Of a DNA stretch of 64,000 bases, positions 29,369 to 51,311 are shown piece after piece. A program made the position numbers and the translations under genes. The stretch is from Octopus sinensis (taxonomy: Eukaryota): positions 6,076,001-6,140,000 of the forward strand of contig NC_043023.1 in NCBI RefSeq assembly GCF_006345805.1, in the 5' to 3' direction. Position 1 is the first letter of the stretch. Every line of letters starts with the position of its first letter. The notes beneath the pieces were generated by a model. The model was not told where the DNA came from. It saw nothing but the letters and a program-made list of their open reading frames with translations, and did not search any database.

Positions 29369-29399
<31 letters not shown>

Positions 29400-29662: not shown

Positions 29663-29705
<43 letters not shown>

Positions 29706-29720
29706 TACCACTACTGCAAG
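29135..29720. repeat. (CTA)n compound microsatellite
   Basis: About 580 nt of CTA/CTG/CCA triplets shortly after exon I. Confidence 0.95.
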
Positions 29721-30122: not shown

Positions 30123-30169
<47 letters not shown>

Positions 30170-30419
30170 GGCGCAGCCTCCTGGCTTCCCAGACCCGTCG
30201 AACCATCCAACCCATGTTAGCATGGAAAATGGACGTTAAACAATGATGATGATGATGATACGCTTCTTTCAGTTTCCGTCTACCAAATCCACTCACAAGG
30301 CTTTGGTTGGCCCGAGGCTATAGCAGAAGACACTTGCCCAAGATGCCACGCAGTGGGACTGAACCTGGAACCATGTGGTTGGTAAGCAAGCTACCTACCA
30401 CACAGCTACTCCTACGCCT

Positions 30420-31035: not shown

Positions 31036-31055
31036 ACCGATGAACATTATTATTA

Positions 31056-31683
31056 TCTCTATATGTAAAAAGATTTGAGTGAGGTCGTTGCCAGTACAGC
31101 GTGACTGGCCCCTGTACCGGTGGTATGTAAAAAGCACCCACTACACCCTCGGAGTGGTTGGCATTAGGAAGGGCATCTAGCTGTAGAAACTCTGCCAAAT
31201 CAACATTGGAGTCTGGTGCAGCCATCTGATTCGCCAGTCCTCAGTCAAAATCGTCCAACCCATGCTAGCATGGAAAGCGGACGTTAAACGATGATGATGA
31301 TATAAAGCTGAAGTTGTCCGTGTGTGGCAGGTTTGGTAGCCTTCAACTAACACAATCTCCTCCGAGACCCTGCAGCGCAAGTTGACAAAAATTGAGAGTA
31401 TAATAGAAGAAGGCTTGCTCTTCCTTCCATAGAAGAAAAAATTCAAATCAGACCATGTTAACACCAAAAATTATTTACATAAAAAAGGTGCTTATTTTTC
31501 TATGAAAATCCTATTTTTTAACGATTTTTTGACTGCTGTGTCGTCATTTTTCGGTGTATTTCAACCAGAAAAATGTTCACTTAAAGAGAATAACAAGCAA
31601 CATAATGCAAATTCTTTACTTTTCAAAAATTCCAATTCTAAAGGGTCGAAACAAATCCGAGCAACGCCGGGCGATACTGCTAG
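31056..31683 (+). mobile_element. Helitron with a nested GAT-tailed repeat
   Basis: a|TCtctatat at 31056; GAT-tailed repeat at about 31065-31299; the element resumes at tataaagctg and ends gagcaacgccgggcgatactgCTAG|t, the same 3' end as 3783-4154. Confidence 0.55.
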
Positions 31684-31911
31684 TATATTATAAAGGTGGT
31701 GAGCTGGCCGAATCGTTAGCACACCAGACAAAATGCTTAGCAGCATTTCAGCTGAGTTCAAATTCACCCAAGTTTGTCTTTACCGTTCATCCCTTTCAGG
31801 GTCCATAGAATAAGTACCAGTAGAGCACTTGCCATCTCCCCTCAAAGTTTCTGGCCTTATATCAAAATTAGAAAGAATTATTTTTTTTTTCTCTATATTC
31901 TTCTTTTGCAG

Positions 31912-32093
31912 CTGAGGCACCGGATTTGCTAGAAAAGGGGAACATGACCCTGAAGAGATCCGAGGGTCAGACCATAAACATTACGTGCAAGACAACTGGC
32001 TATGATTCGGTGCAGGTGCTTTGGATGAAGGATAACAAACAGATGACAGGTGACAGGTATCACATACTAAGGAATGGCAATCTAAACATCAAG
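31912..32093 (+). CDS. Ig exon J: start of Ig5
   Basis: ttttgcag acceptor and AAG|gttagt donor; 182 nt, phase 1-0. Encodes AEAPDLLEK...EGQTINITCKTTG...VLWMKD...DRYHILRNGNLNIK. Confidence 0.9.
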
Positions 32094-32368
32094 GTTAGTA
32101 GTAGTAGTAGTAATAATAATAATAATACTCTTTACTCTTACTCTTTACTTTTTACTTGTTTCAGTCATTTGACTGCGGCCATGCTGGAGTACCGCCTTTA
32201 GTCGATCAAATCGACCCTGGGACTTATTCTTTGTAAGCCTAGTACTTATTCTATCGGTCTCTTTTGCCGAACCGCTAAGTTACAGGGACATAAACACACC
32301 AGCATTGGTTGTCAAGCGATGTTGGTGGGGACAAACACAGACACACAAACATATACACACACACATAC

Positions 32369-32417
<49 letters not shown>

Positions 32418-32582
32418 TACGACAGGCTTCTTTCAGTTTCCGTCTACCAAATCCACTCACAAGGCATTAGTCGGCCCAGGGCTATAGCAAAAGACACTTG
32501 CCCAAGATGCCATGCAGTGGGACTGAACCCAGAACCATGTGGTTGGTTAGCAAGCTACTTACCCCACAGCCACTCCTGCGCC

Positions 32583-32625
<43 letters not shown>

Positions 32626-32835
32626 GTTTGAAATTTTGCCACAAGAGAAGCAATTTCAGGAGAGGGGATGAGTCACATTGACCCCAGTGTTTAACTGGTA
32701 CTTATTTTATCGATTCCAAAAGAATGAATGGCAAAGTCAACCTTGATGGAATTTGAACTCAGAACGGAGTGACGACAACAACACCTAATAATAATAATGA
32801 TGATAATAATAATAATAATGATAATAATAATAATA

Positions 32836-33540
32836 AGGACCACCTAATCTCTGGATGTAAAGTCTTAGCACCAGTGGAGTATAAATTAAGACATGACAGA
32901 GTTGGCCAATATCTACACTGGCTAATAAGTCGGCATTACAATATCAAAACTGCCGACAAGTGGTATAATCACCACCCTGAAGCTGTAACTGAAGGAGAAA
33001 ATGTAACGATTCTGTGGGACTTTCCAGTACATACAGACCGAACCATCAAAGCCAATAAACCAGATATTGTTGTGAAAGACCAAAACAATAAAGTTTGCTT
33101 ATTGATCGACATGAGCATCCCCTGTGATCATAATATCTCGGCGAAAGAGTTTGACAAGCTCAGAAAATATAAAGACCTACTCATTGAAATTGAGAAAATG
33201 TGGCATCTCAAGGTGGTTACAATACCAGTAATCGTAGGAGCACTAGGAATGATCAAGAAGGGAACTGAAAATTATATGAGAATGATCCCTGGTTTACCAT
33301 CCCTGCAAGAAGTGCAAAAGATTGTCTTAACTGGTACATCACATGTATTGAGAAGAGCATTGTCGATGTGAGAACTATTACTACCCATGTATTTTAATTT
33401 AACTTAAAAAAAAAAAAATGAACGAACTATTGAGTTTAGTTTAATGGCTTACCAATGTATACTATGAGTTTCTTTGCCCTAGGAGTCGGGAAGACACTCG
33501 GCAAGAAATGGAAGCAAATTTGAAAGAAGAAAAAAAATAA
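32836..33540 (+). mobile_element. R4/Dong-clade LINE 3' fragment (endonuclease domain)
   Basis: Encodes DHLISGCKVLA...RHDRVG.YLHW...ILWDF...KPDIVV...LIDMSIP...KYKDL...VGALG; flanked by (TAA)n on both sides. Confidence 0.85.
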
Positions 33541-33604
33541 TAATAATAATAATTATAACAATAATATCAGTGATATCAGTGATGATAATAAAAATAATAA
33601 TAAT

Positions 33605-35060
33605 GAAAGGAAACAAGTGGAACCTTCTCATAGACTGATTAATGATATATCAAGTGATGGTGTCACAATAAAAACACTGGTAATTGCACAACTTGATAAT
33701 CGCTACCTCATATGAGTGACAATGAAAAACCAAAATATTGTGAATAACAGTGGTAATGAAACTGAAGCCAATGATGATGACAGTGTTCCACCCGGCAGGC
33801 TCAGAGATTCTGGCCTGGCTCCAACTTGTCGATATCCAGAAAGGGACCACCACACATGGCATAGATGGAGCAAGCAAATTAATGCTGTGATCATGGAGTG
33901 TTACTACCTGAGCAGCCTGGCAGATGAAAATGGTGCTCAAATTAGGGGTTACCGACAATGTATGTATAATCACTGGAGAGAAAAGGGATTGTTTCAACTC
34001 ACGGAACAGAGACTATGTGATTAAGCTAGAGCAATAAGAAAAAAATCGTTGGTTCACAGAAGTAGAGCTGGAAGTTATCAAAAGACAGGTCATGGTAAAT
34101 AGCAGCAGAGATAACGATGAGAATACAGTTCTTACTAATAAGAGTAATCGCATAGCACAGGAAAGGAGCAGTGGTAGTTTACTTGATGAGAGACATACAG
34201 ACGATCTAAAAGAAGATGATAAAACTAATGGTGATATGACAGATGAACAAAAGGCAATCTACGACAGAACAAAGGTAAGGCTACAGGAGAACAATAGCGA
34301 CATTATTTGCAACCTTAAAAAGGTTGATTGATGGAAATTGAACGAAGAAACGAAAAATGTCAATGAAATCTTGAAATACATCAGAAAAACTACTGATAGA
34401 CAAAACTGTACTTGGAGACTGCAAGAGGAGGAAAAGTAACTTAGCCATGTCATGGATCAACTATTGTAAAGCGTACGATATGATCCCACATTCTTGGATT
34501 ATGGAATGTGTGAACCCATTTGGTATTGCATCGAATGTTCAGCGATTGCTTGGAAAAAGTATGGCGAATTGAAGGACGGATCTGACAGCATACGGAAGAA
34601 GTTTAGGGGCAATAGAAATCAGGAGGGGCATCTTCCAAGGGGACTGTCTGTCCCCAGTGATCTTTGTACTGTGCTTGATACCACTAACACTGATTCTGAG
34701 GAAAGCAAAAGATGGGTGTGTATTCAAAAACTGCTAACAAAAAGTCAACCATTTGTTATTCATGGATGACCTCAAACTTTGTGGTAAAGATGAATCCCAA
34801 GTCAGTTCCCTCGTTGATACGGTGTTTACCTTCAGTGCTGATACCAGAATGGAGTTCGGACTGAGAAAGTGTGGTGTGTTAGTCTTGAAGAGAGGCAAAA
34901 TCAAATGTCTGGATGGGCTATCGATACCTTCAGGGTAGGTTATGAAGCAGATAGAAGAGATGGGCTATAAGTTCTTGGGGATTTTGAAAACGGGATAAAT
35001 TGATGGAGAAAGAAATGACAGAAAAATTTAAGGTGGAGTACTTGCACAGACTGAGACTAA
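33605..35060 (+). mobile_element. R4/Dong-clade LINE, internally deleted remnant
   Basis: N-terminal W...MECYY...W...TEQRLCD segment and RT pieces (YCKAYDMIPHSWI, GIFQG, FMDDLKL, MEFGLRKCG); begins right after a (TAA)n tract. Confidence 0.7.
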
Positions 35061-35953
35061 AAAACATTCGAGCGAGGTTGTTGCCAGTGCCGCTGGACTG
35101 GCTCTTGTGCAGGTGGCACGTAAGAAACACCATTTGAGTGTGGCCGTTGCCAGTAGCGCTTGACTGGCCCTCATGCTGGTGGCACATAAAAGCACCCACT
35201 ACACTCTCGGAGTGGTTGGCATTAGGAAGGGCATCCAGCTGTAGAAACTCTGCCAGATCAGATTGGAGCCTGGTGCAGCCATCCGGTTTGCCAGTCCTCA
35301 GTCAAATCATCTGACACTGGTAATAATCACACTCGAATGGTGCCTTTTATGTGCCACTGGCATGGAAGCCGGTTAGCCGCTATGTCAATGATCATGCTCG
35401 TATGGTGCTCTTTGCACCCTTCTAGCATGGATGCCAGTCATCAAATTTGATTTCGATTACACTTGCCTCAACAGCTCTTCGCATTCATCCAAATTTCACA
35501 AAGGAAGTATTAAGCTGGTTTTTTTTCAGTGTTCTCCAAGAGAAAGTACAACAGAAATTACATTTACATATTTTCAAAAATTCATAGTGATATCTACCAT
35601 AGGAAAGAGAAGTCAGCGAATAACGTTTCTCCAATAATTTTCTGAGGAAGGGTTTCTAACTCTGAAATATTGAAATACCAGATAACACAACCAATCCATT
35701 TTATTTTACAAATTGCAGTGTTTTGGGTTTAAAAAAATTTTTATTTGGAAACACTTAGGATTAAAAAGTTCTATCATAGGCCTAAAAGTGGCTGTGGGTT
35801 AAGTAGCTTGCTTACCAACCACATGGTTCCAGGTTCAGTCCCACTGTGTGGCATCTTGGGCAAGTGTCTTCTACTATAGCCTCGAGTCAACCAAAGCCTT
35901 GTGAGTGGATTTGGTAGACGGAAACTGAAAGAAGCCTGTCATATATATGTATA

Positions 35954-36007
<54 letters not shown>

Positions 36008-36072
36008 CATATATATATATATATATATATACATATACATACATATATGTATATATATATATATATATACAT

Positions 36073-36114
<42 letters not shown>

Positions 36115-36189
36115 TTATACATATATATATATACACATAAATCCTTGTGAGTGGATTTGGTAGTTGGAAACTGAAAGAAGCCCATCGTT

Positions 36190-36234
<45 letters not shown>

Positions 36235-36515
36235 GTGTGTGTATGTGTTTGTGTGTCTATGTTTGTCCCCCCCCCCCAACATCACTTGACAACCAATGCT
36301 GGTGTGTTTACGTCCCCGTAACTTAGTGGTTCGGCAAAAGAAACCGATAGAATAAGTACTAGGCTTGCAAAGAATAAGTCCTGGGGTCAATTTGCTCGAC
36401 TAAAGGCGGTGCTCCAGTATGGCCACATTCAAATGACTGAAACAAGTAAAAAGAGTAAATTCTCAGTTACCTCCCTTAGTATTTCTACTAATTTTTTTGT
36501 ATTGTTCTTTCACAG

Positions 36516-36606
36516 AATTTGGACTTAACAGATACTGGCGTCTATCATTGTTATGCTAGTAACAAGTATGGTATGGTCTCAGCAACGAGGAACCTTATAG
36601 TCCGAC
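36516..36606 (+). CDS. Ig exon K: end of Ig5
   Basis: ctttcacag acceptor and C|gtgagt donor; 91 nt, phase 0-1. Encodes NLDLTDTGVYHCYASNKYGMVSATRNLIVR. Confidence 0.9.
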
Positions 36607-37085
36607 GTGAGTATATCTGTTCATTGCTTTTTATTTTCCCTTCCCTTCTCTGTGCTCTAGATGTTACTAGCTAACAAGGGCCCTGTACTGTTTGTGAGAG
36701 CCATGGAGGAGGGCAATATTTTTCATGCTGAGAGATGCTGAAGCATGGAACAAACTGCCGGCATCGGTTGTTAGTTGTCGGAGCACTGCATCCTTCAAAA
36801 CTTCCATGCTTCCTGAGAGATTCGCCAACACTACACCTGATCTTTCTCCCCTCCATACACACGCAAGCATGTATCTGACTCATACACTGTTCGCTTCCCA
36901 GGCATTTGTACATTACTGCATATGCTTTATACACACTTTCTGACAAGTTGTGGTGCACCTGGGCACTGTATACAATAATTTCATTATTATTATTATCTAT
37001 GCTAAGAATTGCCAAGTTTACAATATATATTTAAATGTGTGTATGTGTGGATATATATATACATACACATATATATATACATACA

Positions 37086-38030
37086 AAGGCGGCTATCTGG
37101 CAGAATCGTTAGCATGCCGGGTGAAATGCGTAGCCGTATTTCGTCTGCCGTTACGTTCTGAGTTCAAATTCCGCTGAGGTCGACTTTGCCTTTCATCCTT
37201 TCGGGGTCGATAAATTAAGTACCATTTACCCACTGGGGTCGATGTAATCGACTTAATCCCTCTGTCTGTCCTTGCTTGTCCCCTCTATGTTTAGCCCCTT
37301 GTGGGTAGTAAAGAAATATATATATACATACACATATATATATACATACAAAGGCGGCTATCTGGCAGAAGCGTTAGCACCCCGGGTGAAATGGGTAGCC
37401 GTATTTCGTCTGCCGTTACGTTCTGAGTTCAAATTCCACCGAGGTCGACTTTGCCTTTCATCCTTTCGGGGTCGATAAATTAAGTACCAGTTACGCACTG
37501 GGGTCGATGTAATCGACTTAATCTGTTTGTCTGTCCTTGTTTTTCCCCTCTGTGTTTAGCCCCTTGTGGGTTGTAAAGAAATATATATATACATACACAT
37601 ATATATATACATACAAAGGCGGCTATCTGGCAGAATCGTTAGCATGCCAGGCGAAATGCGTAGCCGTATTTCGTCTGCCGTTACGTTCTGAGTTCAAATT
37701 CCGCCGAGGTCAACTTTGCCTTTCATCCTTTCGGGGTCGATAAATTAAGTACCAGTTATGCACTGGGGTCGTTGTAATCGACTTAATCCCTCTGTCTGTC
37801 CTTGTTTGTTCCCTCTGTGTTTAGCTCCTTCTGGGTAATAAAGAAATAGGTATTTTGTCTGCCGTTACGTTCTGAGTTCAAATTCCACCGAGGTCGACTT
37901 TGCCTTTCATCTTTTCGGGGTCGATAAATTAAGTACCAGTTACGCACTGGGGTCGTTGTAATCGACTTAATCAGTTTGTCTGTCCTTGTTTGTCCCCTCT
38001 GTGTTTAGCTCCTTGTGGGTAGTAAAGAAA
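37086..38030 (+). repeat. Locally amplified tandem array of a tRNA-derived SINE
   Basis: Three ~265-bp units share the private head variant ggcggctatctggc and the same preceding microsatellite; one additional head-less unit follows. Confidence 0.85.
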
Positions 38031-39316
38031 TATATATATACATACACATATATATATACATACACATATTCTGACAAGTGAAAATTGTGTAAATGTAATC
38101 ATAGGCCATATATTACAGGGAATACTCATGTTTACATATTTACAACTTATGTAACCATGGTGACTGGATTTGGTAGATGAAAACTGAAGAACCTTGCTAT
38201 ATAAAAATCAGAAAACAGGAATCACAATGGCTGTCTGTACTTATCCTCTAGAGGGAAAGAGGGGAGAGAGTAAGAGAGAAGAAAGAATGAGAGAAGAGAG
38301 AAAGAGAGAAGAGAGAAGAAAGAACGAGAGAAGAGAGAAAGAAAGAGAGAAAGAGAGGAGAGGGAAAGAGAGTAGGGGTGAAGAGAAGTGGGAGTCAGGG
38401 CAAGAGAGGAGAGTCGGGTGGGAGGAAGTAGGAGGGACGGGAAAAGGGTCAAGGGGAGGAGAGAGAAGGAGAAAAAGAGAGTAAGAGAGTAGGGGTGAAG
38501 AGAAGTAGGAGTGAAGAGGAGTGGGAGTCAGGGCAAGAGAGGAGAGTCGGGTGGGAGGAAGTAGGAGGGACGGGAAAAGGGTCAAGGGGAGGAGGTTAGA
38601 TGAAGAGGGAAGGAGAGTTGAGCCCAAATGGCGTAAAGAAACAAAGAGAGAAGATGAATCCTTGTTCACAGCACAAACGGGAGTCAGGATGGCATCCTCT
38701 GTGCAAGGACAATCCAAACTCAATCAGGAAAAGTAGAGTGAGGATTAAATTTCAATTAGATATAATATTTGATCACTTGTTTTCTTTATTCAAGATTCGG
38801 ACAGAACTTACGGGATGACCTGATAATAGGATAATTTGTAATGTTACCCCAGGAGGATAATTACTAAACACTCTTTACGCTTTTACTCTTTTACTTGTTT
38901 CAGTCATTTTGACTGTGGCCATGCTAGAGCACCGCCTTTAGTCGAGCAACTCGACCCCGGGACTTATTCTTTTTTGTAAGCCCAGTATTTATTCTATCGG
39001 TCTCTTTTGCCGAACCGCTAAGTAACGGGGACATAAACACACCAGCATCGGTTGTCAAGCAATGCTAGGGGACAAACACAGACACACAAACACACACGCA
39101 TACATATATATATACATATATACGATGGGCTTCTTTCAGTTTCCGTCTACCAAATCCACTCACAAGGCTTTGGTCGACCTGAGGCTCTAGTAGAAGACAC
39201 TTGCCCAAGGTGCCACGCAGTGGGACTGAACCCGGAACTATGTGGTTGGTATGCAAGCTACTTACCACACAGCCACTCTTGTACCCTTTTTATATTCAAA
39301 TCATATATCATTGCAG

Positions 39317-39607
39317 GCAAGACAAAAATTGAACCCTCAGCATTTGATAGAAGAGTGAAGGAAGGAAGGGCTGTAACGCTCCCCTGTGCTGCCACAACTG
39401 ACCCTATGGAGGTGGACAATTTGCAGGTCATTTGGTTGAAGGATGGAAAATCCATAGACATGGATGAGGGGAGAATAATTCAGAACACTCAGGACAATTC
39501 ACTGACCATCAACAGTGTAATAATTGGAAAGGATGGTGGCCGCTACACATGTGTGGCCACAAATGGATTGGATTGGGCCAAAATGTCAACGTTTCTTTAT
39601 GTCATGG
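39317..39607 (+). CDS. Ig exon L: Ig6 (third Ig6-like copy)
   Basis: ttgcag acceptor and G|gtaagt donor; 291 nt, phase 1-1. Encodes RKTKIEPSAFDRRVKEGRAVTLPCAATTDPMEVDNLQVIWLKDG...DNSLTI...DGGRYTCVATNGLD...LYVM. Confidence 0.92.
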
Positions 39608-41159
39608 GTAAGTTTGTTTTTTGTGTGTACCACTGCCTCCTTCCCCAGGAATTATCTGTTATCTTTTATCTTTTATTCATTTCAGTCATTTGACTGTGGC
39701 CATGCTGGAGCACCACCCACCAGAATTTTTAGACGAATGTATCAACTTCAGTATTTATTTTCTTTTTAAACCTGCCACTTATTCTTATTTTTTATTGCCC
39801 ACAAGGGGCTAAACATAGAGGGCACAAACAAGGGCAGACAAAGGGATTAAGTTGATTACATCAATCCCCAGTGCATAACTGGTACTTAATTTATCGACCC
39901 CGAAAGGATGAAAGGCAAAGTTGACCTCGGCGGAATTTGAACTCAGAACGTCAAGACAGACGAAATACCGCTAAGCATTTCGCCCGGCATGCTACCATTT
40001 CTGCCAGCTTGCCGCCCTTAAAGCTGGCACTTATTCTATTGATCTCTTTTTGCTGAACCATTAAGTTATGGGGACATAAACACACCAACACCATTCATCA
40101 AGCATCAGTGGAGGGGACAAACACAGACACATAGTCACACACACATGGATATATAGTTTCTTATTTATTTATTGCCCACAAGGGGGCTAAACATAGAGGG
40201 GACAAACAAGGGCAGACAAAGGGATTAAGTTGATTACATCGACCCTAGTGCGTAACTGGTACTTATTTAATCGACCCCGAAAGAATAAAAGGCAAAGTTG
40301 ACCTCGGTGGAATTTGAACTCAGAACGTAGCGGCAGACAAAATACCACTAAGCATTTCACCCGGCGTGCTAACGTTTCTGCCAGCTCACTGCCTTATAGA
40401 TATATAGTTTCTGCCTACCAAATCTGCTCAAAAGGCTTTGTTGAGACCGAGGCACTTGCCCAAGGTGCCACGCAGTTGTGGTGCATGCTATAATTTGGTT
40501 TATACTTCTACAATACAAAAATTATTTTAACTATTATTTTTATGCAATTCCTAATAATACGTGGCCGTAGCCAGCACCGCATCGACTGGCCTCCGTGCTG
40601 GTGGCACGTAACAAACACCAACCGATCGTGGCCGTGCCAGCCTCGCCTGGCATTCGTGCCGGTGGCACGTAAAAAGCACCATCCGTCTGTGGCTGTTCGC
40701 CAGCCTCGTCTGGCACCTGTGTCGGTGGCACATAAAAAGCACCCACAACACTCACGGAGTGGTTGGCGTTAGGAAGGGCATCCAGCTGTAGAAACACCGC
40801 CAGATCTGACTGGCCTGGTGCAGCCTTCTGGCTTCCCAGACCCCAGTTGAACCGTCCAACCCATGCCAGCATGGAAAGTGGATGCTAAACGATGATGATG
40901 ATGATGATGATTCGACATAGTTTCCAAGGAAAGACAGCATGATAAAGAATGTGACAATGCTGGCCCCTTTGAATTACAGGCACACTTCATTTTTGTTAAC
41001 AGTATGGACTGAAGGAAGGTGAGATGAAGTGTCTTGCTCAAGGTCACAAAGACAGCTGGGAATTGAACTCACGACCTTACATTCGTGACTCAAATACCTT
41101 AGCCAGTAAGCCATGCACCTACACAGGAGACACTAAAATAGACCCATTCACACTATATA

Positions 41160-41179
41160 GGTGTGTGTGTGTAAGAGAG

Positions 41180-41215
<36 letters not shown>

Positions 41216-41403
41216 TGTCTGTGTGTGTGTGTATGTGTGTGTGTGTCTGTGTGTGTATGTGTGTGTGTGTATGTGTGTGTCTGTGTGTGTATGTGTGTGT
41301 GTATGTGTCTGTGTGTGTGTGTGTGTCTGTGTGTGTGTGCGTGTGTGTGTGCATGTGTGTGTGTGTGCATGTGTGTGTGTGCGTGTGTGTGCATGTTTGT
41401 GTG

Positions 41404-41475
<72 letters not shown>
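41160..41475. repeat. (TG)n compound microsatellite
   Basis: About 315 nt of TG repeats with interruptions. Confidence 0.95.
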
Positions 41476-42048
41476 CATAGTGTTTATGTCCTTTATTCCA
41501 AATTTTCCAATTGGTCATTATATTAATTATAATTTTCTGCATTATGGTAGAAGACTAAAACTGTGTGGTAAGTAGCTTGCTTACCAACCAGATGGTTCCG
41601 GGTTCAGTCCCACTGCGTGGCATCTTGGGGTGTCTTCTACTATAGCCTCGGGCCGACCAAAGCCTTGTGAGTGGATTTGGCAGGCAGAAACTGAAAGAAG
41701 CCGGTTGTATATATGTAGATATATATATGCGTGTGTGTGTTTGTGTGTCTGTGTTTGTCCCCCTAGCATTGCTTGACAACCGATGCTGGTGTGTTTACGT
41801 CCCCGTCACTTAGCAGTTTGGCAAAAGAGACCAATAGAATTTACAAAGAATAAGTCCCGGGGTAGATTTGCTCGACTAAAGGCGGTGCTCCAGCATGGCC
41901 ATAGTCAAATGACTGAAACAAGTAAAAGAGTAAAAGAGTAAAGACTTGTCACAGTTGAAAGAGTTTTCCCTTTAGTTTTCTTTCTAATTTAGCACAATAA
42001 TCAATTAAATTATTACACTAATTACAATTTTTCATTGATGTATTTCAG

Positions 42049-42194
42049 GTCCTTAGAGATGGTGAAACAGGTGTCCAAGAAGAAGACCCCATCCTAATAT
42101 TAAGGCCCTTATGCTGAAGATCTGCTGTAACGACAGTGATGGGGTCAGTGTTGAGGTGCCTCATGTGAAGTACCTCTTGCCTGCACACCATTGA
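42049..42194 (+). pseudogene. Inverted, frameshifted genomic copy of the UBA1 last exon; candidate terminal exon of the Ig gene
   Basis: Hand alignment to the reverse complement of 54090-54234 gives 17 substitutions plus a 1-nt insertion in 146 nt (about 88% identity). Homology extends about 30 nt into the upstream intron (ttcag acceptor intact) and into the 3' UTR to about 42324. Read in phase 1 from exon L it gives G|GT CCT TAG. Confidence 0.9.
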
Positions 42195-42919
42195 ACACAC
42201 TCTCTTCCTCACCCACCTCTCTCTCTCTCTTACATACACACACACATTTACACTTACATATACTTATATGCATTACATATATACACTATACCTGTTTGGA
42301 AGCCACTCCTGCTGCAATTACAACCATTGTTGCCATTGTCATGTATTATCCACAATTGCAGGGCATTGATGAGACTACAACAAAAGTCTTCTTCACATTG
42401 GATGAAGCCATAACGTGACCTCCTTCTTTCTCAACATGTCTTCTTGGCAGAGACCTCATAGAGGTTCGTTATGGCATTCTCCAGTTACAATCCTCATTAT
42501 TTGTTATATTTGTCAAATCAAACAGGATTTAAAATCCAGTTTGCTCTTCATCCTCTTGGGAGCAATCTTATTGACTAACCCTCTTTCAAAAATTTCTGGT
42601 TTTGTGCTAATATGAGAAAAAAAGATAAACTCCAGATCCCTATTTCTGTCAAAATACTCTGCATTTGTTTCATTTAATTTGGAAAGCAATGAAGAATTTA
42701 GAAAAAATACCTGCCATTATTAAGCAGGTATTTGGAACATAAATTAACCTGAAATTTTAATTTAGATAACTTTAACCGTTTTTGTTGAAAAATTCTGCTT
42801 TTGTTTCATTTAATTTTGAAAATAATAAAGAATTTAGTGAAATAAAGACACTGCATTGGTTTCAATTAATTATGAAAATAATGAAGTATTTATGAAAATA
42901 ACTTTCTCACGGCCTATGC

Positions 42920-43490
42920 CAGGGGTGTAACCAGTCCACTTATGCATACCTTTCCTTCATTTGGACACTAAACTCTGCTTGCGAAGACCTGTTGAGGCAA
43001 GTGAAACCGAAATCGAAATCAAATTTGATGACTGGCACCCGTGCTAGTGGAGCGCTAAGAGTATTATACGAGTGAGATTGTTGCCAGAGCAGCTAACTGG
43101 CTTCTGTGCCGGTGGCACGTAAAAAGCACCATTCAAGCATGATCGTTACCTGCGTCACCTTACTGGCACTTGTGCTTGTAGCATGTGAAAATACATTCGA
43201 GTGAGGTTGTTGCCAGTGTTGGTGGACTGGCCCCGGTGCCAGTGGCACGTAAAAAGCACCGTTGCCAGTACTGCCTGATCGGCCCTTGTGCTGGTGGCAC
43301 ATAAAAGCACCCACTACACTCTCGGAGTAGTTGGCGTTAGGGAGGGCATCCAGCTGTAGAAACTCTGCCAGATCAAGATTAGAGCCTGGTGCAGCCATCT
43401 GATTTGCCAGTCCTCAGTCAAATCGTCCAACCCATGCCAGTATGGAAAGCGGACGTTTAATGACGATGATGATGATGATGATGATGGTGA
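42920..43490 (+). mobile_element. Abundant GAT-tailed retroposon-like repeat (representative copy)
   Basis: Internal ~50-nt gtggcac.taaaaagcacc repeats and a (GAT)n tail. Other copies at about 1545-2490, 14670-15150, 25300-25730, 35065-35500, 40555-40910 and 55260-55645. Confidence 0.7.
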
Positions 43491-45013
43491 ATATTGAGCT
43501 GGTGTTTGGAAGATAAATTAATATGAAAGTTTGATTGAATGTTTTTAGTTCACTTTAATCTTTTGTTTCCATATTTCTGTTGAAATTCACAGAGTTTATT
43601 TCAATTAATTTAGGAAAATATTAAAGAATTTTGAAAATAACTTTATCATTATACTGGTGCTTGGAACAAACTCATTCTTACTCTCTTTTACTTGTTTCAT
43701 TTGACTGTGGCCATGCTGGAGCACCACCATTAGTCAAGTAAATCGACCCCAGGATTTATTCTTTGTAAGCCTAGTACTTATTATATCAGTCTCTTTTGCC
43801 GAATTGCTAAGTTATGGGGATGTGAACACACCAGCGTCGGTTGTCAAGTGATGTTGTGGGGGGTACAAAGACAGACACACAAACACACACATATATATAC
43901 ATATACATATATACTTTGAAGGCACATGGCCCAGTGGTTAGAGCGTCAAGCTTACGATCTTCAGGTTGTGAGTTCGATTCCCAGACCGGGCTGCATGTTG
44001 TATTCTTGAGCAAGACACTTTATTTCACATCACTCCAGTTAACTCAGCTATAGAAATATGTTGTGACGTCACAGGTGCCAAGCTGTATCGGCCCCTTTGC
44101 CATTGTCTCAGATAACACTGGTGGCGTGGAGAGGGGAGGCTGGTATGCATGGGCGACTGCTGGCCTTCCTCAAACAACCGTGCCTGAGAGGGTAACTTTG
44201 TAGGTGCAATCCCATGGTCAGTCATGACTGAAGGGGGTCTCAATACATATATACAACAGGCTTCTTTCAGTTTCTGTCAACCCAGTCCACCCACAGGGCT
44301 TTGGTCAGCCTGAGGCTATAGTAGAAGACACTTGCCCAAGGTGCCATGCAGTGGGACTGAACCCAGAACCATGTGGTTGGTAAGCAAGCTGCTTACACAA
44401 ACATATACACACACACATATATATATACGACAGGCTTCTTTCAGTTTCCTTCTACCAAATCCACTCACAAGGCTTTGGTCGTCCTGAGGCTATAGTAGAA
44501 GACACTTGCCCAAGGTGCCACGCAGTGGGACTGAACCCAGAACCATGTGGTTGGTAAGCAAGCTGCTTACACAAACATATACACACACACATATATATAT
44601 ATACGACAGGCTTCTTTCAGTTTCCTTCTACCAAATCCACTCACAAGGCTTTGGTCGTCCTGAGGCTATAGTAGAAGACACTTGCCCAAGGTGCCACGCA
44701 GTGGGACTGAACCCGGAACCATGTGGTTGGTAAGCAATCTACTTACCACACAGCCACTCCTGCGCCTATGAAATTTTGACAGAAGGTTTTAATTTAGATC
44801 ACTTTAACCCTTTTGTTACCATATATCTGTTGAAATATGCTGCTTTTGTTTTAGTTAAGTTTTAAAATAATGAAAAATATAATAAAATAAATTGTCGTTG
44901 TTAAAATGATGACTCTGTACATAGCTTGCATTGCTCTCACCAACCATTCTTCAACTTCTTGTTTCCTTAGTGACCAAGTTAGAGATAATGGTACTGTGGT
45001 ACAGTATCAAAGG

Positions 45014-45579
45014 AGGCGCAATGGCCCAGTGGTTAGGGCAGCGGACGCGCGGTCGTAGGATCGCGATTTCGATTCCCAGACCGGGCGTTGTGAGTGTTTA
45101 TTGAGCGAAAACACCTAAAGCTCCACGAGGTTCTGACAGGGGGTGGTGGCGATCCTTGCTGTACTCTTTCTGAAGGCGGCGAGCTGGCAGAATCGTTAGC
45201 ATACCGGGCGAAATGCTTAGCGGTATTTCATCTGCAGCTACATTCTGTGTTCAAATTCCACCGAGGTCGACTTTGCCTTTCATCTTTTCGGGGTCAATTA
45301 AATAAGTACCAGTTACGCACTGGGGTCGATGTAATCGGCTTAATCCGTGTGTCTGTCTCCTCTGTGTTTAGCCCTTTGTGGGTAGTAAAGAAATAGGTAT
45401 TTCGCCTGCCTTTACATTCTGAGTTCAAATTCCGCCGAGGTCGACTTTGCCTTTTATCCTTTCGGGGTCGATTAAATGTGTACCAGTTACGCACTGGGGT
45501 CGATGTAATCGGCTTAATCCGTGTGTCTGTTCTTGTTTGTCTCCTCTGTGTTTAGCCCCTTGTGGGTAGTAAAGAAATG
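45014..45579 (+). mobile_element. Composite two-head tRNA-derived SINE with a 16-bp TSD
   Basis: GGTACAGTATCAAAGG at 44998-45013 and 45580-45595. First head is aggcgcaatggcccagtggttagg...ttcgattccc; second head at about 45174; duplicated 3' unit. Confidence 0.85.
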
Positions 45580-46435
45580 GGTACAGTATCAAAGGACACC
45601 AACAGAACAACAAATGAAGGGCAAAGGGGCTAACCCTTAGCCAATCATGCATGACGCATGATCTTCATCTTTTTTAACCCCTTAGCTTACAGATTAGTCA
45701 AATGTAATGCTTACTCTTTTTTTTTTTTTATTACTCTTTTACTTGTTTCAGTCGTTTGACTGCGGCCATGCTGGAGCACCACCTTTAGTCGAGCAAATCG
45801 ACCCCGGGACCTATTCTTTGTTAGCCTAGTACTTATTCTACTGGTCTCTTTTGCTGAACCGCTAAGTTATGGGGATATGAACACACCAGCATCGGTTGTC
45901 AAGCGATGTTGGGGTGACAAACACAGACACACAAGCATATACACACACATACATATATACACAGGTTTCTTTCAGTTTCCGTTTACCAAATCCACTCACA
46001 AGGCATTGGTCAGCCGAAGGCTATAGTAGAAGACACTCAAGTCAAAATGCCACGCAGTGGGACTGAACCCAAAACCATGTGGTTGGTAAGCAAGCTACTT
46101 ACCACACATCCACTCCTGCGCCTATATTTATTCCTAATTTTTATAGATAATTATACACAATCTTGTAGCTTTGTGACTTCAATGACATTGTAAGGTAGGT
46201 GTGATAGGCCAGATCTGGCCAGTTTCAATATGAAATAGGTAGAATATCTGGGTCACATCTGGCCAGTTTAAAACCGTTTAGCATTCAGAATATTCTGTCA
46301 AAAATAATGCTTATCTATTCACATTGTTTTGTATTAATCATGCATTATCTTATAGATTTGAGATTTCAATGATTACTCTTTTTTACTCTTTTACTTATTT
46401 CAGTCATTTGACTGTGGCCATGCTGGAGCACCGCA

Positions 46436-48120
46436 TACCAGGAAAATTTGATGGGTTAATCCAACCCTCAATATCACCATAAAAACTAATATAAGTAAAG
46501 AATTCTAAAGACTAGTTTCCAAACACTTCCACATATGCCATAGAATTTTTAATAGGAGAACGTTGAAGGTCAGTTATTCTTGTTGTAAGAACTTCACCTC
46601 TTTAACAAACCAACACAATGTTAGTTAACGGTGCCGAAATAAATAACGAACCTAAATGCAACTTCAGAGACCAAAGTTGCTGTCCCTTAGAAGGAAATTG
46701 TCTGGTGAAAGCAATTGTCTATAGGGCCAAAGTACAAATGGACTAACAGGTGCATATAAGACATACATAGGTGCTACAGAAAATTCCATCAAAATCAGGA
46801 TATATTCCCACAGAAATTCCTTAAAATATCCAAAGATATAACAAGTCTGGCCAAATATGTGTGGCAGTTAAAGGAAGGAGAATCTCCTTTCAAACTTTAC
46901 TGGTCCTTTCTAAAAAAAGCAGCCCTATACAGACACAGAACGAACAGAGGTTCAATGAGGTGTACTTTATGACTGAGTGAGAAATTCATCCTCTTTCAGA
47001 AAATTCAGAAAAATGCCTTAAACCAAAGATCAGAACTCTTGAATTGTTGTAAACACTCTTCCAAGTATAGGATGAGCAACTAAAAAATTCCATAAGATAG
47101 CAAAAATTGCTATTTGGATTTACTAAATTCGCTCAAATTAACCTACATCTATCGTATATCACCTCACTTAACCTTTATTTCACCAACAAACAGACCCCCT
47201 CCCACCAACACACACAAAACCTGTAACTATCTATAATTTAACTCTTCAATACTTTCAAATGCACCCCTCTGCCAACTACACTGAATTTTATATATGGCCT
47301 TTTGCCTACCAAATCTTTTTATGATAATTTTAAAAGTATGCTCAGTAAAGAAAATCCATCACTCATCATTTTGTTTCATTTTCTCTCCCAAATTGCATGT
47401 CATACATGTATTTGCTTGTATATATATTTCTTTACTACCCACAAGGGGCTAAACACAGAGGGGACAAACACGGACAGACAAACGGATTAAGTCGATTACA
47501 TCAACCCAGTGCATAACTGGTACTTTATTTATCGACCCCAAGAGGATGAAAGGCAAAGTCGACCTCGGCGGAATTTGAACTCAGAATGTAACAAGACGAA
47601 ACAAATTTGCTTGTATATATTCAACACGCCAGTCTCATACCAGTGCATATATAATCGTTGTGTATATGTATGTACAATGTATCTATTGTGTGTATATTTA
47701 CATGTGTGTGTGTGTCGCGAGCCACTACACGTTCTTTATTTTCTCTCCTTGTTTCTCTCTGTATTCCTTTCTGAAGAAGAGCGTAGGCTCGAAACGTTAA
47801 AGACTTTTTCACTTCCCAAGTGTTAAACTAATACATCTGTTTGTTGTCCACACCACCTGTCTTCGTGAATTCTCCCCCTATATATATATATATATACATA
47901 CAGAGTAAGCGCATAAATGTGAAACAAGGTGGAAGAAAATAGTATTCAAATACTGGATGTAGAGTAATAGGCTTTATTAATAAATCAGCAAAAACATCAC
48001 AAAAACTGTTACTCAGAGTTTCCCGTTCATTGGACAGTTTTGGTTGAGAAACTGTCTGACGAACGGGAAAGTGAAATTCTGAGTAACAATTTTGGCAATA
48101 TTTTTGCAGCTTTATTAATA
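46436..48120 (+). mobile_element. Penelope-like element remnant with 3' pseudo-LTR-like segment
   Basis: Broken frames give LKVSYSCC, CPLEGNCLVKAIVYRAKV, TYIGATE, SLAKYVWQLKE and LNQRSELLNCCKH (GIY-YIG region). A SINE fragment interrupts at about 47425-47600. Confidence 0.7.
47767..47802 (+). ncRNA. Minimal type-I hammerhead ribozyme motif
   Basis: cttt-CTGAAGA-a-gagc(gtag)gctc-GAA-ACGT-t-aaag: conserved core, 4-bp stem II, palindromic ACGT stem III and 4-bp stem I. Confidence 0.55.
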
Positions 48121-48240
48121 AAGTGTGTGTGTGTATGTAGTGTTTTTCCTCTACTGCCAATTTAATTACAAGATCCTTAACTACTGGGGTTTTTTTGCCT
48201 TTTTTTACTTACTCGTTTTGTTTGTTTTTACGACTGCACG

Positions 48241-48290
<50 letters not shown>

Positions 48291-48298
48291 CATACATA

Positions 48299-49465
48299 CA
48301 CAGGGATTGGACAAAATAATGGAAACACCTAGCATCATAATTTTGAAATATCTATAAAACTGTCAAAAGCTTGTTTCTTATTGTTTTTTTGACTTATTAT
48401 TAGTGTTGCTTGATATGTTTTGCTAAAATTGCTGTTTCTTTTCAGATATCATTAGAAAAAGGTAATTAAAATTCATTAAAATGACAGATCTATCAGACTT
48501 TCAAAGAGGTCAAATTATTGGTGTTCATATGGCTTAATAAAAACAGCTGAAATGTTTGGTGTATCAAGAAGTACTGTCTCAAAAGTAATGACAGCCTTTG
48601 AGAAAGAAGGGAAAACATCCTCGTCGAAACAAAACTCTGGAAGAAAACCAAAACTTTCAGATAAAATTGTTAGAAAGGATCACAAAACTACAGCTCCCAA
48701 AATTACTCCAGAGCTTAATGACCACCTCGAGAACCCAGTTTCTGCAAAAACTGTTCGCCGGGAAATTGCACAAAGCCAGATTTCACGTGAAGGCTGCAAT
48801 CAAAAAAACCTCTACTTTCAAAAACAAACGTTGCAAAGTGTTTAGAGTGGAGTAAAAACCCTACAGAATTGGTCCCTAGAGCAGTGAAAAAATGTTATTT
48901 TCTTGGATGAGTCATCCTTTACCTTGTTTCCAACAACCAGCCGAGTATATGTGTGGAGACAGCCAAAAAAGGCATTTGACCCAGACTGCCTTTTTCCAAC
49001 TGTTAAACATGGAGGAGGATCTGCAATGATCTGGAAGGCTATATCTTGGAAATCTGCCAGCCCATTGGTTTCCCTTCATGGTAGAATTAAGTCAAGACTA
49101 TTTAAGCATTTTATCTAATCGAATTCATCCTATGGTTGCGGAACTATTTCTGGAGGGAAACCCAATCTTTCAGGATGATAATGCACCAATTCACACAGCT
49201 AAAGTTGTTACTGAATGGCACGAGGAACATTCTAGTGAAGTTGAACATCTTATCTGGTCACCACAGTCCCCAGATCTCAATATTATTGAACATTTATGCT
49301 GCATTTTAGAAAAACAAGGAGTTGGTATCCTCTGCCATCATCACTACAAGAACTGGAAACTGTTTTAGCAGAAGAATGGACAAAAATTCCTTTGAAAACC
49401 ATTCATACTTTCACAGAATTCAAGCTGTAATTACTGCCAAAGGCGGTCCTACCCCATATCTGAAC
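48299..49465 (+). mobile_element. Degenerate Tc1-like transposon
   Basis: Left TIR cagggattggacaaaataatggaaacacc after a TA run. Broken transposase includes GVSRSTVSKV (HTH), DESSFTLF, FQDDNAPIH and WSPQSPDLNIIEHL; right TIR missing. Confidence 0.85.
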
Positions 49466-51271
49466 ATTTCAGGCCAGTGATAGCAAGTTCAACTCTTTAG
49501 CATTCAGATTATTGTCAAATGTAATTTTTATTTATTCACAATGTTTTGAATTAATCGTGCATGACCTTGTACTTTCGAGATTTCAATGATGTTTAAGAAT
49601 GACATTACTGGACTAGTCCGAGAGGCCAGATCCGGTCAGTTTGAACATAAAACAGGTAGAATATTTGGGACAGATATAGTCAGTTTGACCCCTTAGTATT
49701 CACACTATCAAATGTAATTTTTATTTATCCACAATGTTTTGAATTTATCATGCATTATCTTGTAGCTTTGAAATTTCAATGATCATCATTTAACACGTCC
49801 ATTGTCCATGCTGGCATGGGTTGGACGGTTTGACTGGGCTGCACCAGACTCCAGTCAGATTTGGCATGGTTTTCTGTGGTTGGATGCCCTTCCAAGCGCA
49901 ATGGGTGTCTTTATGTGCCATTATGTGCCATTATGTGCCATTTGTGTCACACCAGTATCTGCCACAACTGCAATTTCGCTCAGCTAGGGTCTTCTCAGGC
50001 ACAACATAGTGCCAGCAGTCTCGGTCATTGCCTCCATGGGGCCCAAGGTGATGATGAGACTATTTTTAGAATGACCATACACAGTAAGTGCTAGAAGCTG
50101 GATGTGGCCAGTTTGAACATGAAATGGGCTCAATATTTTGGCTAGACATACTCTTTTACTTGCTTCAGTCAGTTGACTGCGGCCATGCTGGAGCACCACC
50201 TTTAGTCGAGCAACTCGACCCCGGGACTTATTCTATCAGTCTCTTTTGCCGAACCGCTAAGTGACAGGGACATAAACACACCAGCATCGGTTGTCAAGCA
50301 ATGGGGACAAACAGACATGCCTACCTTCGAAACACGCTAGAGTTGAACTAGGGACAGCTGATGAAGGGGATTTTTCCTTGTGTAGTTTGTCTTGTACTCT
50401 GTTTTTCTGTTGTAAAAAAATGGTTTGTTCCATGCTTGTTTTTCCGTTTTCGTTTCCCGTTGAGTTCTGCGTCTATTTGTGGTGTCCTGTACTCACGTAT
50501 ATATATTTATATATGCATGTATATATACATGTAGATGTAGGTACGTACATATATGTATGTATGTATGCATATATTTTATTTATTACACTAAATAAATAAA
50601 TATATATACAAATACATATATACAACGGGCTTCTTTCAGTTTCCGTCTACCAAATCCACTCACAAGGCTTTGGCTGGCCCGAGGCTATAGTAGAAGACAC
50701 TTGCCCAAGGTGCCATGCAGTGGGACTGAACCTGGAACCATGTGGTTGGTAAGCAAGCTACTTACCACACAGCCACTCCTGCACCTATGGTCAGTTTCAA
50801 TGCTAAAGGGCTCAGATTTGACCCCCAATGAACCCCAGCACAAATGAAGTCAAGTCATATACATGTTTTAATCCATGTTTTATTTTCATATCATTATTGT
50901 TATTATTATTATTATTATTATGATAAAGTTGAAATATTTTTATTGGTTATATTTTTTTTTCTTTTCTTATTTTCTGTCAGTTTTCCTTGTTTTATAAAAC
51001 ATAAATTAAGGAGCTGCATGGATGACCCACTGACCAAGACGCACAGACAGAATTAGCAAGAGAGAGAGAGAATGAGGGATTTAAAAAAAATTAGGAGAAA
51101 AAATAACAATGAAATGGTTTCTAATTTAATAATTATAATTATCAAATAATAAATTTTATTATTTAAAAATCAGAAACCATCAACATAAATATATTAATAA
51201 TCTCTTAGAACAAGGCAGATAACCCCAAGAAACGGAGTTGTCTTCCCCTTGGCCAGTAAGCTTTGACACTT

Positions 51272-51311
<40 letters not shown>

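What the first reader, a model, noticed from the sequence alone, without database searches (positions are those of the whole stretch)
42017..42324. Inverted copy of the UBA1 terminal exon appears captured as the last exon of the Ig gene
Seen: 42049-42194 (+) is about 88% identical to the UBA1 last exon (54090-54234, -). It keeps the intronic acceptor and proximal 3' UTR homology, so it is a DNA-level duplication rather than a retrocopy. A 1-nt insertion destroys the UBA1 frame. It lies 2.4 kb after Ig exon L on the same strand and was the clearest exon-like segment I found there. Exon L ends in phase 1, so splicing reads ATG G|GT CCT TAG, i.e. Gly-Pro-stop. Inference: an inverted duplication of a housekeeping gene's 3' end gave a truncated L1-family paralog a ready-made acceptor, stop and UTR, creating a chimeric gene.
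Basis: partly seen in the sequence, partly recalled or inferred. Interest (0 to 1): 0.85.

Follow-up and report, generated by a model that had tools for sequence, protein, structure and literature searches.

The report
UBA1 exon copy ends Ig gene
A small flipped copy of the last exon of the housekeeping gene UBA1 sits 2.4 kb after the last immunoglobulin exon of a neighbouring octopus gene, and existing gene models in two octopus species use it as that gene's final exon (two codons, then a stop). This is a tidy but ordinary case of a partly duplicated gene borrowing a new 3' end.

Summary
Window 41948-42325 (+) is a DNA-level inverted partial copy of the UBA1 3' end at 54883-53936 (-). It carries about 100 nt of intron, the 145-nt last exon (88.3% identical, with one 1-nt insertion) and about 130 nt of 3' UTR.

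The genome is Octopus sinensis. All four long RefSeq isoforms of the window's own gene (hemicentin-1/2-like, e.g. XP_036370266.1) end in ...YVMGP. Thirteen canonical exons in the window, finishing 39317-39607 + 42049-42056, reproduce its last 783 residues exactly. In O. vulgaris, two transcript-informed gene models end their CDS exactly at TTTCAG|GTCCTTAG.

- The "truncated L1 paralog" is a signal peptide plus three tandem Ig1-6 units derived from the adjacent neuroglian gene. It has no FN3 or TM domains.
- The stop codon is out of frame and new. It is not UBA1's stop.
- No poly(A) signal lies in the UBA1-derived part.
- The pseudo-exon exists twice, because it lies in a ~39-kb inverted segmental duplication that predates the O. 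sinensis/O. vulgaris split.

I examined no raw RNA reads. This is a new example of a known kind of event, of modest interest.

The parts
41948..41999 (+). Distal intron-derived piece of the UBA1 copy
   Evidence: 80.8% identical to 54883-54832 (-). It directly abuts a SINE-like repeat at 41561-41944.
42000..42048 (+). Copy of the last 49 nt of the UBA1 intron: pyrimidine tract and acceptor (tgtatttcag|G)
   Evidence: 77.6% identical to 54283-54235. The acceptor is identical in all four copies, two per species.
42049..42056 (+). Coding part of the terminal exon of the hemicentin-like Ig gene: GT CCT TAG (Gly completion, Pro, stop)
   Evidence: Reproduces the ...YVMGP* end of XP_036370266.1 exactly. 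The O. vulgaris CDS ends on the orthologous TAG in two genes.
42049..42194 (+). Pseudo-exon: copy of the UBA1 last coding exon, with a 1-nt insertion at 42091. Apart from its first 8 nt it is presumably 3' UTR of the Ig mRNA.
   Evidence: 88.3% identical to 54234-54090 (-). The UBA1 frame is broken after 15 codons.
42195..42325 (+). Copy of the proximal UBA1 3' UTR. Homology ends at 42325.
   Evidence: 78.6% identity with several indels against 54089-53936.
42303..42418 (+). Alternative terminal coding exon (acceptor ttggaag|CC), used by the RefSeq model of the paralog on the other arm. It begins inside UBA1-UTR-derived sequence.
   Evidence: XP_029652301.2 (P0004) ends ...YVM|ATPAAITTIVAIVMYYPQLQGIDETTTKVFFTLDEAIT*. 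This maps at 100% to window 42302-42415 and to C27:5926745-5926632.
42824..42846 (+). First canonical poly(A) signals (two AATAAA) after the terminal-exon acceptor. Candidate 3' end, not derived from UBA1.
   Evidence: Pattern scan. Not verified by any transcript data.
39317..39607 (+). Exon L: last Ig (Ig6-type) exon, phase 1-1, donor ATGG|gtaagt
   Evidence: Sequence. Part of the exact exon chain.
4183..39607 (+). The 12 upstream coding exons of the same gene in the window: 4183-4470, 8188-8481, 12796-12907, 16595-16965, 17934-18062, 19444-19546, 21975-22180, 23366-23497, 28915-29058, 31912-32093, 36516-36606, 39317-39607
   Evidence: The chain with canonical AG/GT sites translates exactly to residues 995-1777 of XP_036370266.1.
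54090..54234 (-). Parent: genuine last coding exon of UBA1 ([12 protein letters not shown]...[11 protein letters not shown])
   Evidence: Translation. Pfam E1_UFD at E = 4.7e-40. Best PDB matches are UBA1.
53936..54089 (-). Parent: proximal UBA1 3' UTR that was copied. The candidate UBA1 poly(A) signals (ATTAAA at 53425 and 53364) lie outside the copied part.
54284..54821 (-). About 540-nt insertion in the UBA1 last intron, absent from the copy. It is flanked by the direct repeat ATTAATTATATCA and has internal inverted repeats, so it is probably a TE that landed after the duplication.
   Evidence: (I12).
14039..53354 (.). One arm of a ~39-kb inverted segmental duplication that carries the Ig exons and the pseudo-exon. 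The other arm is C27:5956082-5917381.
   Evidence: Megablast blocks at 94-97% identity. Both arms are also present in O. vulgaris.

Best explanation
A ~0.4-kb piece of the 3' end of UBA1 (about 100 nt of the last intron, the last coding exon and about 130-150 nt of 3' UTR) was copied in inverted orientation to a site about 12 kb away. That site is 2.4 kb downstream of the last Ig exon of a convergently transcribed gene. The gene is an Ig-only derivative of the adjacent neuroglian (L1-family) gene: a signal peptide plus three tandem Ig1-6 units, with no FN3, TM or cytoplasmic exons.

The copy lies on the Ig gene's strand in mRNA sense, so its inherited branch, pyrimidine tract and CAG|G acceptor are functional. 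Exon L (phase 1) splices to it, and the reading frame hits an out-of-frame TAG after Gly-Pro. The rest of the UBA1-derived sequence plus about 0.5 kb of unrelated sequence serves as 3' UTR. Cleavage probably occurs at AATAAA around 42.83 kb.

The stop lies in the last exon, so the mRNA should escape nonsense-mediated decay and encode a secreted protein of about 19 Ig domains.

What is shown: the duplication, its DNA-level nature, its presence in both arms and both species, and exact agreement with the annotated CDS ends.

What is inferred:
- That the annotated junction reflects real transcripts.
- The poly(A) site.
- The copying mechanism (template switching, or a repair patch copied from the nearby locus).
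- The age. Intron divergence is ~21%, so K is ~0.24. The ortholog rate calibration is ~0.5%/My per lineage. Together these give roughly 20-30 My, a very rough figure.
For: - Homology, its boundaries and its uniqueness in the genome.
- UBA1 identity of the parent.
- Exon L phase and junction arithmetic.
- All four long RefSeq isoforms of the window's gene end in YVMGP.
- The 13-exon chain with canonical splice sites equals the RefSeq C-terminal 783 aa.
- Only one credible acceptor can yield G-P-stop.
- Two O. vulgaris genes (CAI9743333-35 and CAI9743320-22) have a CDS ending exactly at TTTCAG|GTCCTTAG.
- Those models start at internal ATGs and come in several isoforms. That is the signature of PASA/TransDecoder ORFs on transcript assemblies. 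The annotation used Iso-Seq and RNA-seq: PMC10700109.
- The gene has Ig domains only, with no fn3.
- It is 61% identical to the neuroglian Ig1-6 region over 584 aa, and the neuroglian 3' exons lie just left of the array.
- No FN3 or TM homology on the + strand anywhere in the window.
Against: - I saw no junction-spanning reads. The support is gene models, and Gnomon can extend a model ab initio to the nearest stop.
- The RefSeq model of the paralog on the other arm (XP_029652301.2) uses a different acceptor 254 nt downstream, although the CAG|GTCCTTAG site is intact there. Usage may therefore be alternative or uncertain.
- A search for short transcript-derived protein fragments ending in YVMGP found none.
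- The pseudo-exon is no better conserved among the four copies than the surrounding intron or intergenic DNA (98-100% everywhere from 39.2 to 43.7 kb). There is no signal of selection on it.
- No poly(A) signal lies inside the UBA1-derived part.
Confidence: 0.82

Rival explanations
1. The copy is real but the terminal-exon role is an annotation artefact or a minor isoform. Transcripts of the Ig gene would mainly end by read-through into the intron after exon L (adding KFVFCVYHCLLPQELSVIFYLLFISVI*), or use the weaker acceptor at 42302/42303 and encode a 38-residue tail.
For: - XP_029652301.2 uses the 42303-type acceptor in the paralog.
- No read-level data were examined.
- No transcript fragments were found in the protein collection.
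- There is no excess conservation.
Against: - Two annotation pipelines, two species and two paralogs agree on the same 8-nt coding terminal exon. Ab initio finders or protein alignment would rarely pick such an exon.
- The O. vulgaris models look transcript-derived, with internal-ATG starts and several isoforms.
- The 42049 acceptor matches the gene's other acceptors (tttcag|), and the exon L donor is a consensus GTAAGT.
Confidence: 0.12
2. The 42-kb copy, or its twin 190 kb away, is an assembly artefact such as a haplotig or a collapsed or misjoined contig.
For: - The O. sinensis assembly has 13,516 scaffolds and the region is repeat-rich.
- The two arms are 94-97% identical.
Against: - Both arms, each with the pseudo-exon, are present in the independently sequenced and assembled O. 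vulgaris genome.
- In three flanking blocks (up1, down1, down2) each O. sinensis arm is closer to one O. vulgaris arm than to its own paralog, i.e. the arms form orthologous pairs.
- There are no N gaps in the 264 kb examined.
- The copy differs from the parent by 12-23%, far beyond haplotype divergence.
Confidence: 0.01
3. The segment is a processed retrocopy of UBA1 mRNA, or a fragment carried in by a transposon that captures host exons.
For: - A SINE-like repeat abuts the 5' edge (41561-41944).
- The region is full of TEs.
Against: - About 100 nt of UBA1 intron is included, and there is no poly(A) tail.
- Only three copies exist in the genome, and two of them are explained by the segmental duplication, so there was no amplification as TE cargo.
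- The 311 nt immediately 3' of the copy (42330-42640) has no other match in the 264 kb examined apart from its twin on the other arm, although 42640-43100 beyond it is locally repeated.
Confidence: 0.02

Closest known systems
Partial gene duplicates that recruit new 3' sequence (partial or chimeric duplicates; reviewed by Katju 2012, PMC3449122; e.g. the Drosophila Hun gene, PMC1463047)
   Same: A duplicate that lost its ancestral 3' exons (here FN3, TM and the cytoplasmic tail of neuroglian) gains a new terminal exon, stop and UTR from sequence at or near its new location.
   Different: The recruited sequence is not anonymous flanking DNA. It is itself a small inverted duplicate of another gene's terminal exon, and its pre-existing 3' splice site is reused. 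It adds only two codons.
Chimeric or fusion genes made by exon shuffling of duplicated fragments (e.g. jingwei, Sdic; established knowledge, not tested here)
   Same: Pieces of two unrelated genes end up in one transcript after DNA-level duplication.
   Different: No UBA1 protein sequence is expressed. The UBA1 frame is broken and read out of phase, so the chimerism is confined to the splice site and the 3' UTR.
Exonization of transposable elements as alternative terminal exons (e.g. Alu or LINE-derived last exons; TE-chimeric RNAs reviewed in PMC13690279)
   Same: An inserted fragment supplies an acceptor and an early stop, which truncates the host protein.
   Different: The fragment is a single-copy gene piece with a bona fide, already optimised acceptor. 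It is not a repeat with cryptic sites. It appears to be the constitutive terminal exon in all four long RefSeq isoforms.
Truncated secreted derivatives of adhesion genes created by segmental duplication (e.g. human-specific truncated duplicates; PMC6169893 for context)
   Same: The ectodomain-only product of a partial duplicate sits next to its parent gene.
   Different: The Ig1-6 module was then re-amplified in tandem three times and the whole array was duplicated as a palindrome.

Membership tests
DNA-level (segmental) partial duplication of UBA1 | Homology extends beyond the exon into the intron and UTR | tested here: met
   Intron pieces 41948-42048 are 78-81% identical and the UTR is 79% identical.
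Processed pseudogene / retrocopy | Intronless, with a poly(A) tract and target-site duplication | tested here: not met
   It contains intron sequence with the acceptor. Homology ends at 42325 with no A-tract.
Exonized terminal exon of the Ig gene | Acceptor used in mRNA, with an in-frame stop in the last exon | tested here: met
   Met at annotation level only. The RefSeq and O. vulgaris CDS ends coincide with 42056 and its orthologs. Raw reads were not examined.
Exonized terminal exon of the Ig gene | Cleavage and polyadenylation site downstream | tested here: inconclusive
   AATAAA occurs at 42824 and 42841, outside the UBA1-derived part. No 3'-end data were available.
UBA1 (parent gene) | C-terminal ubiquitin-fold domain of E1, closest to UBA1 rather than UBA6 or UBA7 | tested here: met
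   PF09358 at E = 4.7e-40. PDB UBA1 chains score E ~1e-40, against ~1e-7 for UBA6/UBA7.
L1CAM / neuroglian family | Six N-terminal Ig domains homologous to L1-type Ig1-6 | tested here: met
   61% identity over 584 aa to O. sinensis neuroglian. Exon-by-exon matches to mollusc neuroglians.
L1CAM / neuroglian family | FN3 repeats, a transmembrane helix and a cytoplasmic tail | tested here: not met
   No PF00041 hit in XP_036370266.1. No tblastn hits beyond Ig6 in the window. It is a derivative of the family, not a member.
Hemicentin (the RefSeq name) | VWA, G2F, EGF or TSP1 domains besides the Ig array | tested here: not met
   Only Ig-type Pfam families hit. The name reflects Ig-array similarity only.

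The most novel reading that the evidence does not exclude
The inverted UBA1 fragment may do more than supply a splice site.

The Ig gene and UBA1 are transcribed convergently, and the two ~330-bp copies are inverted 11.6 kb apart. Read-through transcripts from either gene would therefore fold into a long imperfect dsRNA. In a coleoid this could recruit ADAR editing or small-RNA pathways to the UBA1 3' end.

Alternatively, the sense-oriented UBA1 exon and UTR sequence in the Ig mRNA's 3' UTR could couple the two mRNAs through shared miRNA or RBP sites.

Nothing here tests either idea. The lack of extra conservation argues mildly against both.
Probability: 0.04. Interest if true: 0.6.

Novelty: new member of a known kind. 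Interest (0 to 1): 0.35.

Why it matters
It is a clean, datable example of how a partial gene duplicate that has lost its 3' end acquires a working terminator. It reuses the ready-made 3' splice site of a small duplicated fragment of a neighbouring housekeeping gene.

It also explains the odd two-residue C-terminus (Gly-Pro) of the annotated octopus "hemicentin-like" proteins. It shows that these genes are Ig-only, probably secreted derivatives of neuroglian, amplified in tandem and as a palindrome. That is of some interest for the expansion of adhesion-molecule genes in cephalopods.

It does not reveal a new mechanism.

Tried and rejected
- Mis-assembly or haplotig: rejected, because both arms and the pseudo-exon are present in the independent O. 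vulgaris assembly, and in three flanking blocks the arms pair up as orthologs across species.
- Retrocopy: rejected on intron content.
- FN3 or TM exons hidden downstream of exon L: none found with four full-length L1-type queries.
- Selection on the pseudo-exon: a sliding comparison of the four copies shows the whole 39.2-43.7 kb stretch is 98-100% identical, so this is uninformative.
- Direct transcript evidence from short protein fragments in Logan or ENA: no close hits.
- Exact look-up of the shorter O. vulgaris isoforms failed. The longest isoforms worked.
I replaced it with a local search of 264 kb.
- Homology between the copy's further flanks and the UBA1 intron or downstream region: none beyond 41948-42325.
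- O. bimaculoides: only a 145-aa partial protein turned up. It shows an Ig6-to-Ig1 unit junction, so the tandem-unit gene is older than 34 My. Its terminal exon could not be reached.

Full report
**Observation.** The inverted repeat is real. The repeat finder lists arms 42089-42207 / 54077-54195 (87%) and 42000-42090 / 54193-54283 (81%), offset by a single base. A local alignment joins them into 42000-42325 (+) against 54283-53936 (-).

Part by part:
- The exon (42049-42194 vs 54234-54090) has 128 matches, 17 mismatches and one 1-nt gap, so 88.3%.
- The 49 nt of intron before the acceptor are 77.6% identical.
- The 3' UTR part is 78.6% identical, with several indels.

A more sensitive comparison adds a second intron piece, 41948-41999 vs 54883-54832 (80.8%). 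The ~540 nt that separate the two pieces in the UBA1 intron are bounded by the direct repeat ATTAATTATATCA and contain inverted repeats. They therefore look like a transposon that entered the parent intron after the copy was made.

The copied unit is thus at least 378 nt: about 100 nt of intron, the whole last coding exon and about 130-150 nt of UTR. That makes it a DNA-level duplicate, not a retrocopy. In the 2.72-Gb genome the segment has only three full-length matches, each with E <= 1.6e-65.

**The parent.** The three last exons on the minus strand (63.9 kb, 56.4 kb, 54.2 kb) translate to a complete E1 ubiquitin-fold domain (PF09358, E = 4.7e-40). They match solved UBA1 structures at E ~1e-40, against ~1e-7 for UBA6 and UBA7. 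The 1-nt insertion at 42091 breaks this frame in the copy (SLEMVKQVSKKKTPS*).

**The host gene.** The assembly is Octopus sinensis. The window is C27:6076001-6140000 of a 13,516-scaffold, 2719-Mb genome, which matches the published statistics.

The Ig exons on the plus strand belong to a RefSeq gene called hemicentin-1/2-like: XP_029652303.1, XP_036370266.1, XP_036370267.1 and XP_036370268.1, of 1776-1872 aa.

A simple exon-chaining script found 13 exons in the window with canonical AG/GT sites. Their translation equals residues 995-1777 of XP_036370266.1 exactly.

The protein starts 65 kb upstream of the window with a signal-peptide exon (MKISPVSIFILVAVAGSVYSG). It consists of three tandem Ig1-6 units plus extra Ig6-type exons. 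Pfam finds only Ig-type domains, with no fn3. No FN3, TM or cytoplasmic homology exists on the plus strand of the window.

The units are 61% identical over 584 aa to the Ig1-6 part of O. sinensis neuroglian, which starts with the same signal-peptide sequence. The last neuroglian exons lie at C27:5.877-5.9095 Mb, just left of the array.

So the gene is an Ig-only, presumably secreted derivative of a partial neuroglian duplication. It sits between neuroglian and the convergently transcribed UBA1.

**Is the pseudo-exon its last exon?** All four long RefSeq isoforms end ...STFLYVMGP.

Downstream of exon L, only two places on the plus strand could produce G-P-stop after an AG. One is 42049, with the acceptor atttttcattgatgtatttcag|G, the same tttcag| ending found at five of the gene's other twelve acceptors. 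The other is a poor site at 54177.

Independent support comes from O. vulgaris. The proteins CAI9743333-35 and CAI9743320-22 also end in YVMGP. For the longest isoform of each gene I fetched the locus. In both loci the annotated CDS ends on the TAG of TTTCAG|GTCCTTAG (L031 position 85092; L032 position 65260).

That annotation combined Iso-Seq and RNA-seq transcript assemblies (StringTie, PASA, TransDecoder) with EVM and PASA updates (PMC10700109). The models begin at ATGs internal to Ig exons and come in several isoforms. This is what ORFs called on transcript assemblies look like. I therefore infer, but have not shown, that spliced transcripts cover the junction.

**Caveats.**
- I saw no reads.
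- The RefSeq model of the paralog on the other arm (XP_029652301.2) instead joins exon L to an acceptor 254 nt further on (window equivalent 42302/42303). It encodes a 38-residue tail, even though its CAG|GTCCTTAG is intact.
- A search for short transcript-derived fragments found nothing close.

- The acceptor is indeed inherited from UBA1.
- The stop is not inherited. It is an out-of-frame TAG. The parent sequence read in the Ig phase gives GCQRW*, so an early stop was available from the start and substitutions moved it up to codon 3.
- Only about 270 nt of the UTR are UBA1-derived. No AATAAA or ATTAAA lies in that part. The first signals are at 42824 and 42841. UBA1's own candidate signals (53425, 53364) were not copied.
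- At the protein level the gene gains two residues, so it is chimeric only in its splice site and UTR.

The third genomic match to the UBA1 exon (C27:5926722-5927046, minus strand) is 97% identical to the window copy over more than 2 kb. Window 14.0-53.35 kb is one arm of a ~39-kb inverted segmental duplication. The other arm is C27:5956082-5917381, at 94-97% identity. The whole 5.92-6.13 Mb interval is a palindrome-like array of Ig1-6 units: two units on the left arm (minus strand) and three on the right arm (plus strand).

Both arms exist in O. vulgaris. In three flanking blocks each O. sinensis arm is closer to one O. vulgaris arm (97-99%) than to its paralog (96-98%). The arm duplication therefore slightly predates the ~2.5-My split, and it is not an assembly artefact (divergence time from PMC10700109).

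The UBA1 fragment is much older. It shows ~21% intron divergence, against ~2.5% between orthologs, which gives roughly 20-30 My by a crude clock. This is inference. An O. bimaculoides partial protein shows an Ig6-to-Ig1 unit junction, so the multi-unit gene itself is older than 34 My.

The four pseudo-exon copies are 99-100% identical, but so is everything from 39.2 to 43.7 kb. Conservation therefore says nothing about selection.

**Mechanism of copying.** The fragment is small and inverted, was copied from 12 kb away, is not amplified elsewhere, and has no TE hallmarks of its own. Replication template switching, or a repair patch copied from the nearby locus, is the most economical explanation. 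This is inference only. The 5' boundary is obscured by a SINE-like element (41561-41944, more than 200 copies in 264 kb) and a (TG)n tract.

**Verdict.** Partial duplicates recruiting new 3' ends, and exonization of inserted fragments, are well documented (e.g. PMC3449122, PMC1463047). This is a new, neat member of a known kind. Its terminal exon is already present, unremarked, in public gene models. Interest is modest.

Noticed in passing
window 14039-53354 and C27:5917381-5956082 (loci L015-L019): A ~39-kb inverted segmental duplication at 94-97% identity. The whole 5.92-6.13 Mb interval is a palindrome-like array of neuroglian-derived Ig1-6 units, with two units on the minus-strand arm and three on the plus-strand arm. 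The right-arm homology stops at 53354, just past UBA1's candidate poly(A) signals.
   Followed up: partly
C27:5877296-5909540 (L011-L014) and C27:6010846-6010908 (L024): The canonical neuroglian gene (XP model P0134, 1398 aa, with FN3, TM and tail) ends about 8 kb from the left arm. Its signal-peptide sequence is identical to that of the hemicentin-like gene, which points to a partial duplication of neuroglian as the origin of the array.
   Followed up: partly
L031 10001-46188 (O. vulgaris OX597842.1:7.90-8.00 Mb): In O. vulgaris the orthologous locus carries a ~36-kb tandem repeat of the unit exons: every exon from 10001 to 37179 recurs 36.2 kb later at 98-100% protein identity. This is either a very recent duplication or an assembly duplication. 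The two O. vulgaris arms are about 600 kb apart, against about 190 kb in O. sinensis.
   Followed up: no
window 54284-54821 (-): A MITE-like insertion of about 540 nt in the last UBA1 intron. It has a 13-nt direct repeat (ATTAATTATATCA) at its ends and internal inverted repeats (54549-54650 / 54732-54833). It is absent from the older pseudo-exon copy.
   Followed up: partly
window 42303-42418 (+): The alternative terminal exon used in the RefSeq model of the paralog encodes a moderately hydrophobic tail (ATPAAITTIVAIVMYY...). If real, it would give a different C-terminus from the same UBA1-derived segment.
   Followed up: no
window 26664-28728 (-), 58346-60623 (+), 48480-49368 (+): TE remnants. 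There are LINE-type reverse transcriptase ORFs (RVT_1 at E = 2e-26 and 2e-17, plus an endonuclease domain), one inside an Ig-gene intron and one inside a UBA1 intron. There is also a Tc1/mariner-like transposase fragment (DDE_3, HTH_Tnp_Tc3_2).
   Followed up: partly
window 19508-20534 (+/-) and 29046-29868: Long open frames made of Thr/Pro-rich or Ser/Leu-rich low-complexity repeats inside introns of the Ig gene. These are almost certainly simple-repeat artefacts, not genes.
   Followed up: no
window 41111-41540: A ~430-nt imperfect (TG)n microsatellite, followed by a SINE-like element (41561-41944, more than 200 copies in the 264 kb examined). Both lie directly upstream of the UBA1-derived fragment and hide its original 5' boundary.
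   Followed up: partly
cluster of P0132: The 90% protein cluster of the hemicentin-like protein contains three short Logan/ENA members (P0205-P0207, 51-57 aa) whose sequences look unrelated to Ig domains. This is probably a clustering oddity.
   Followed up: no
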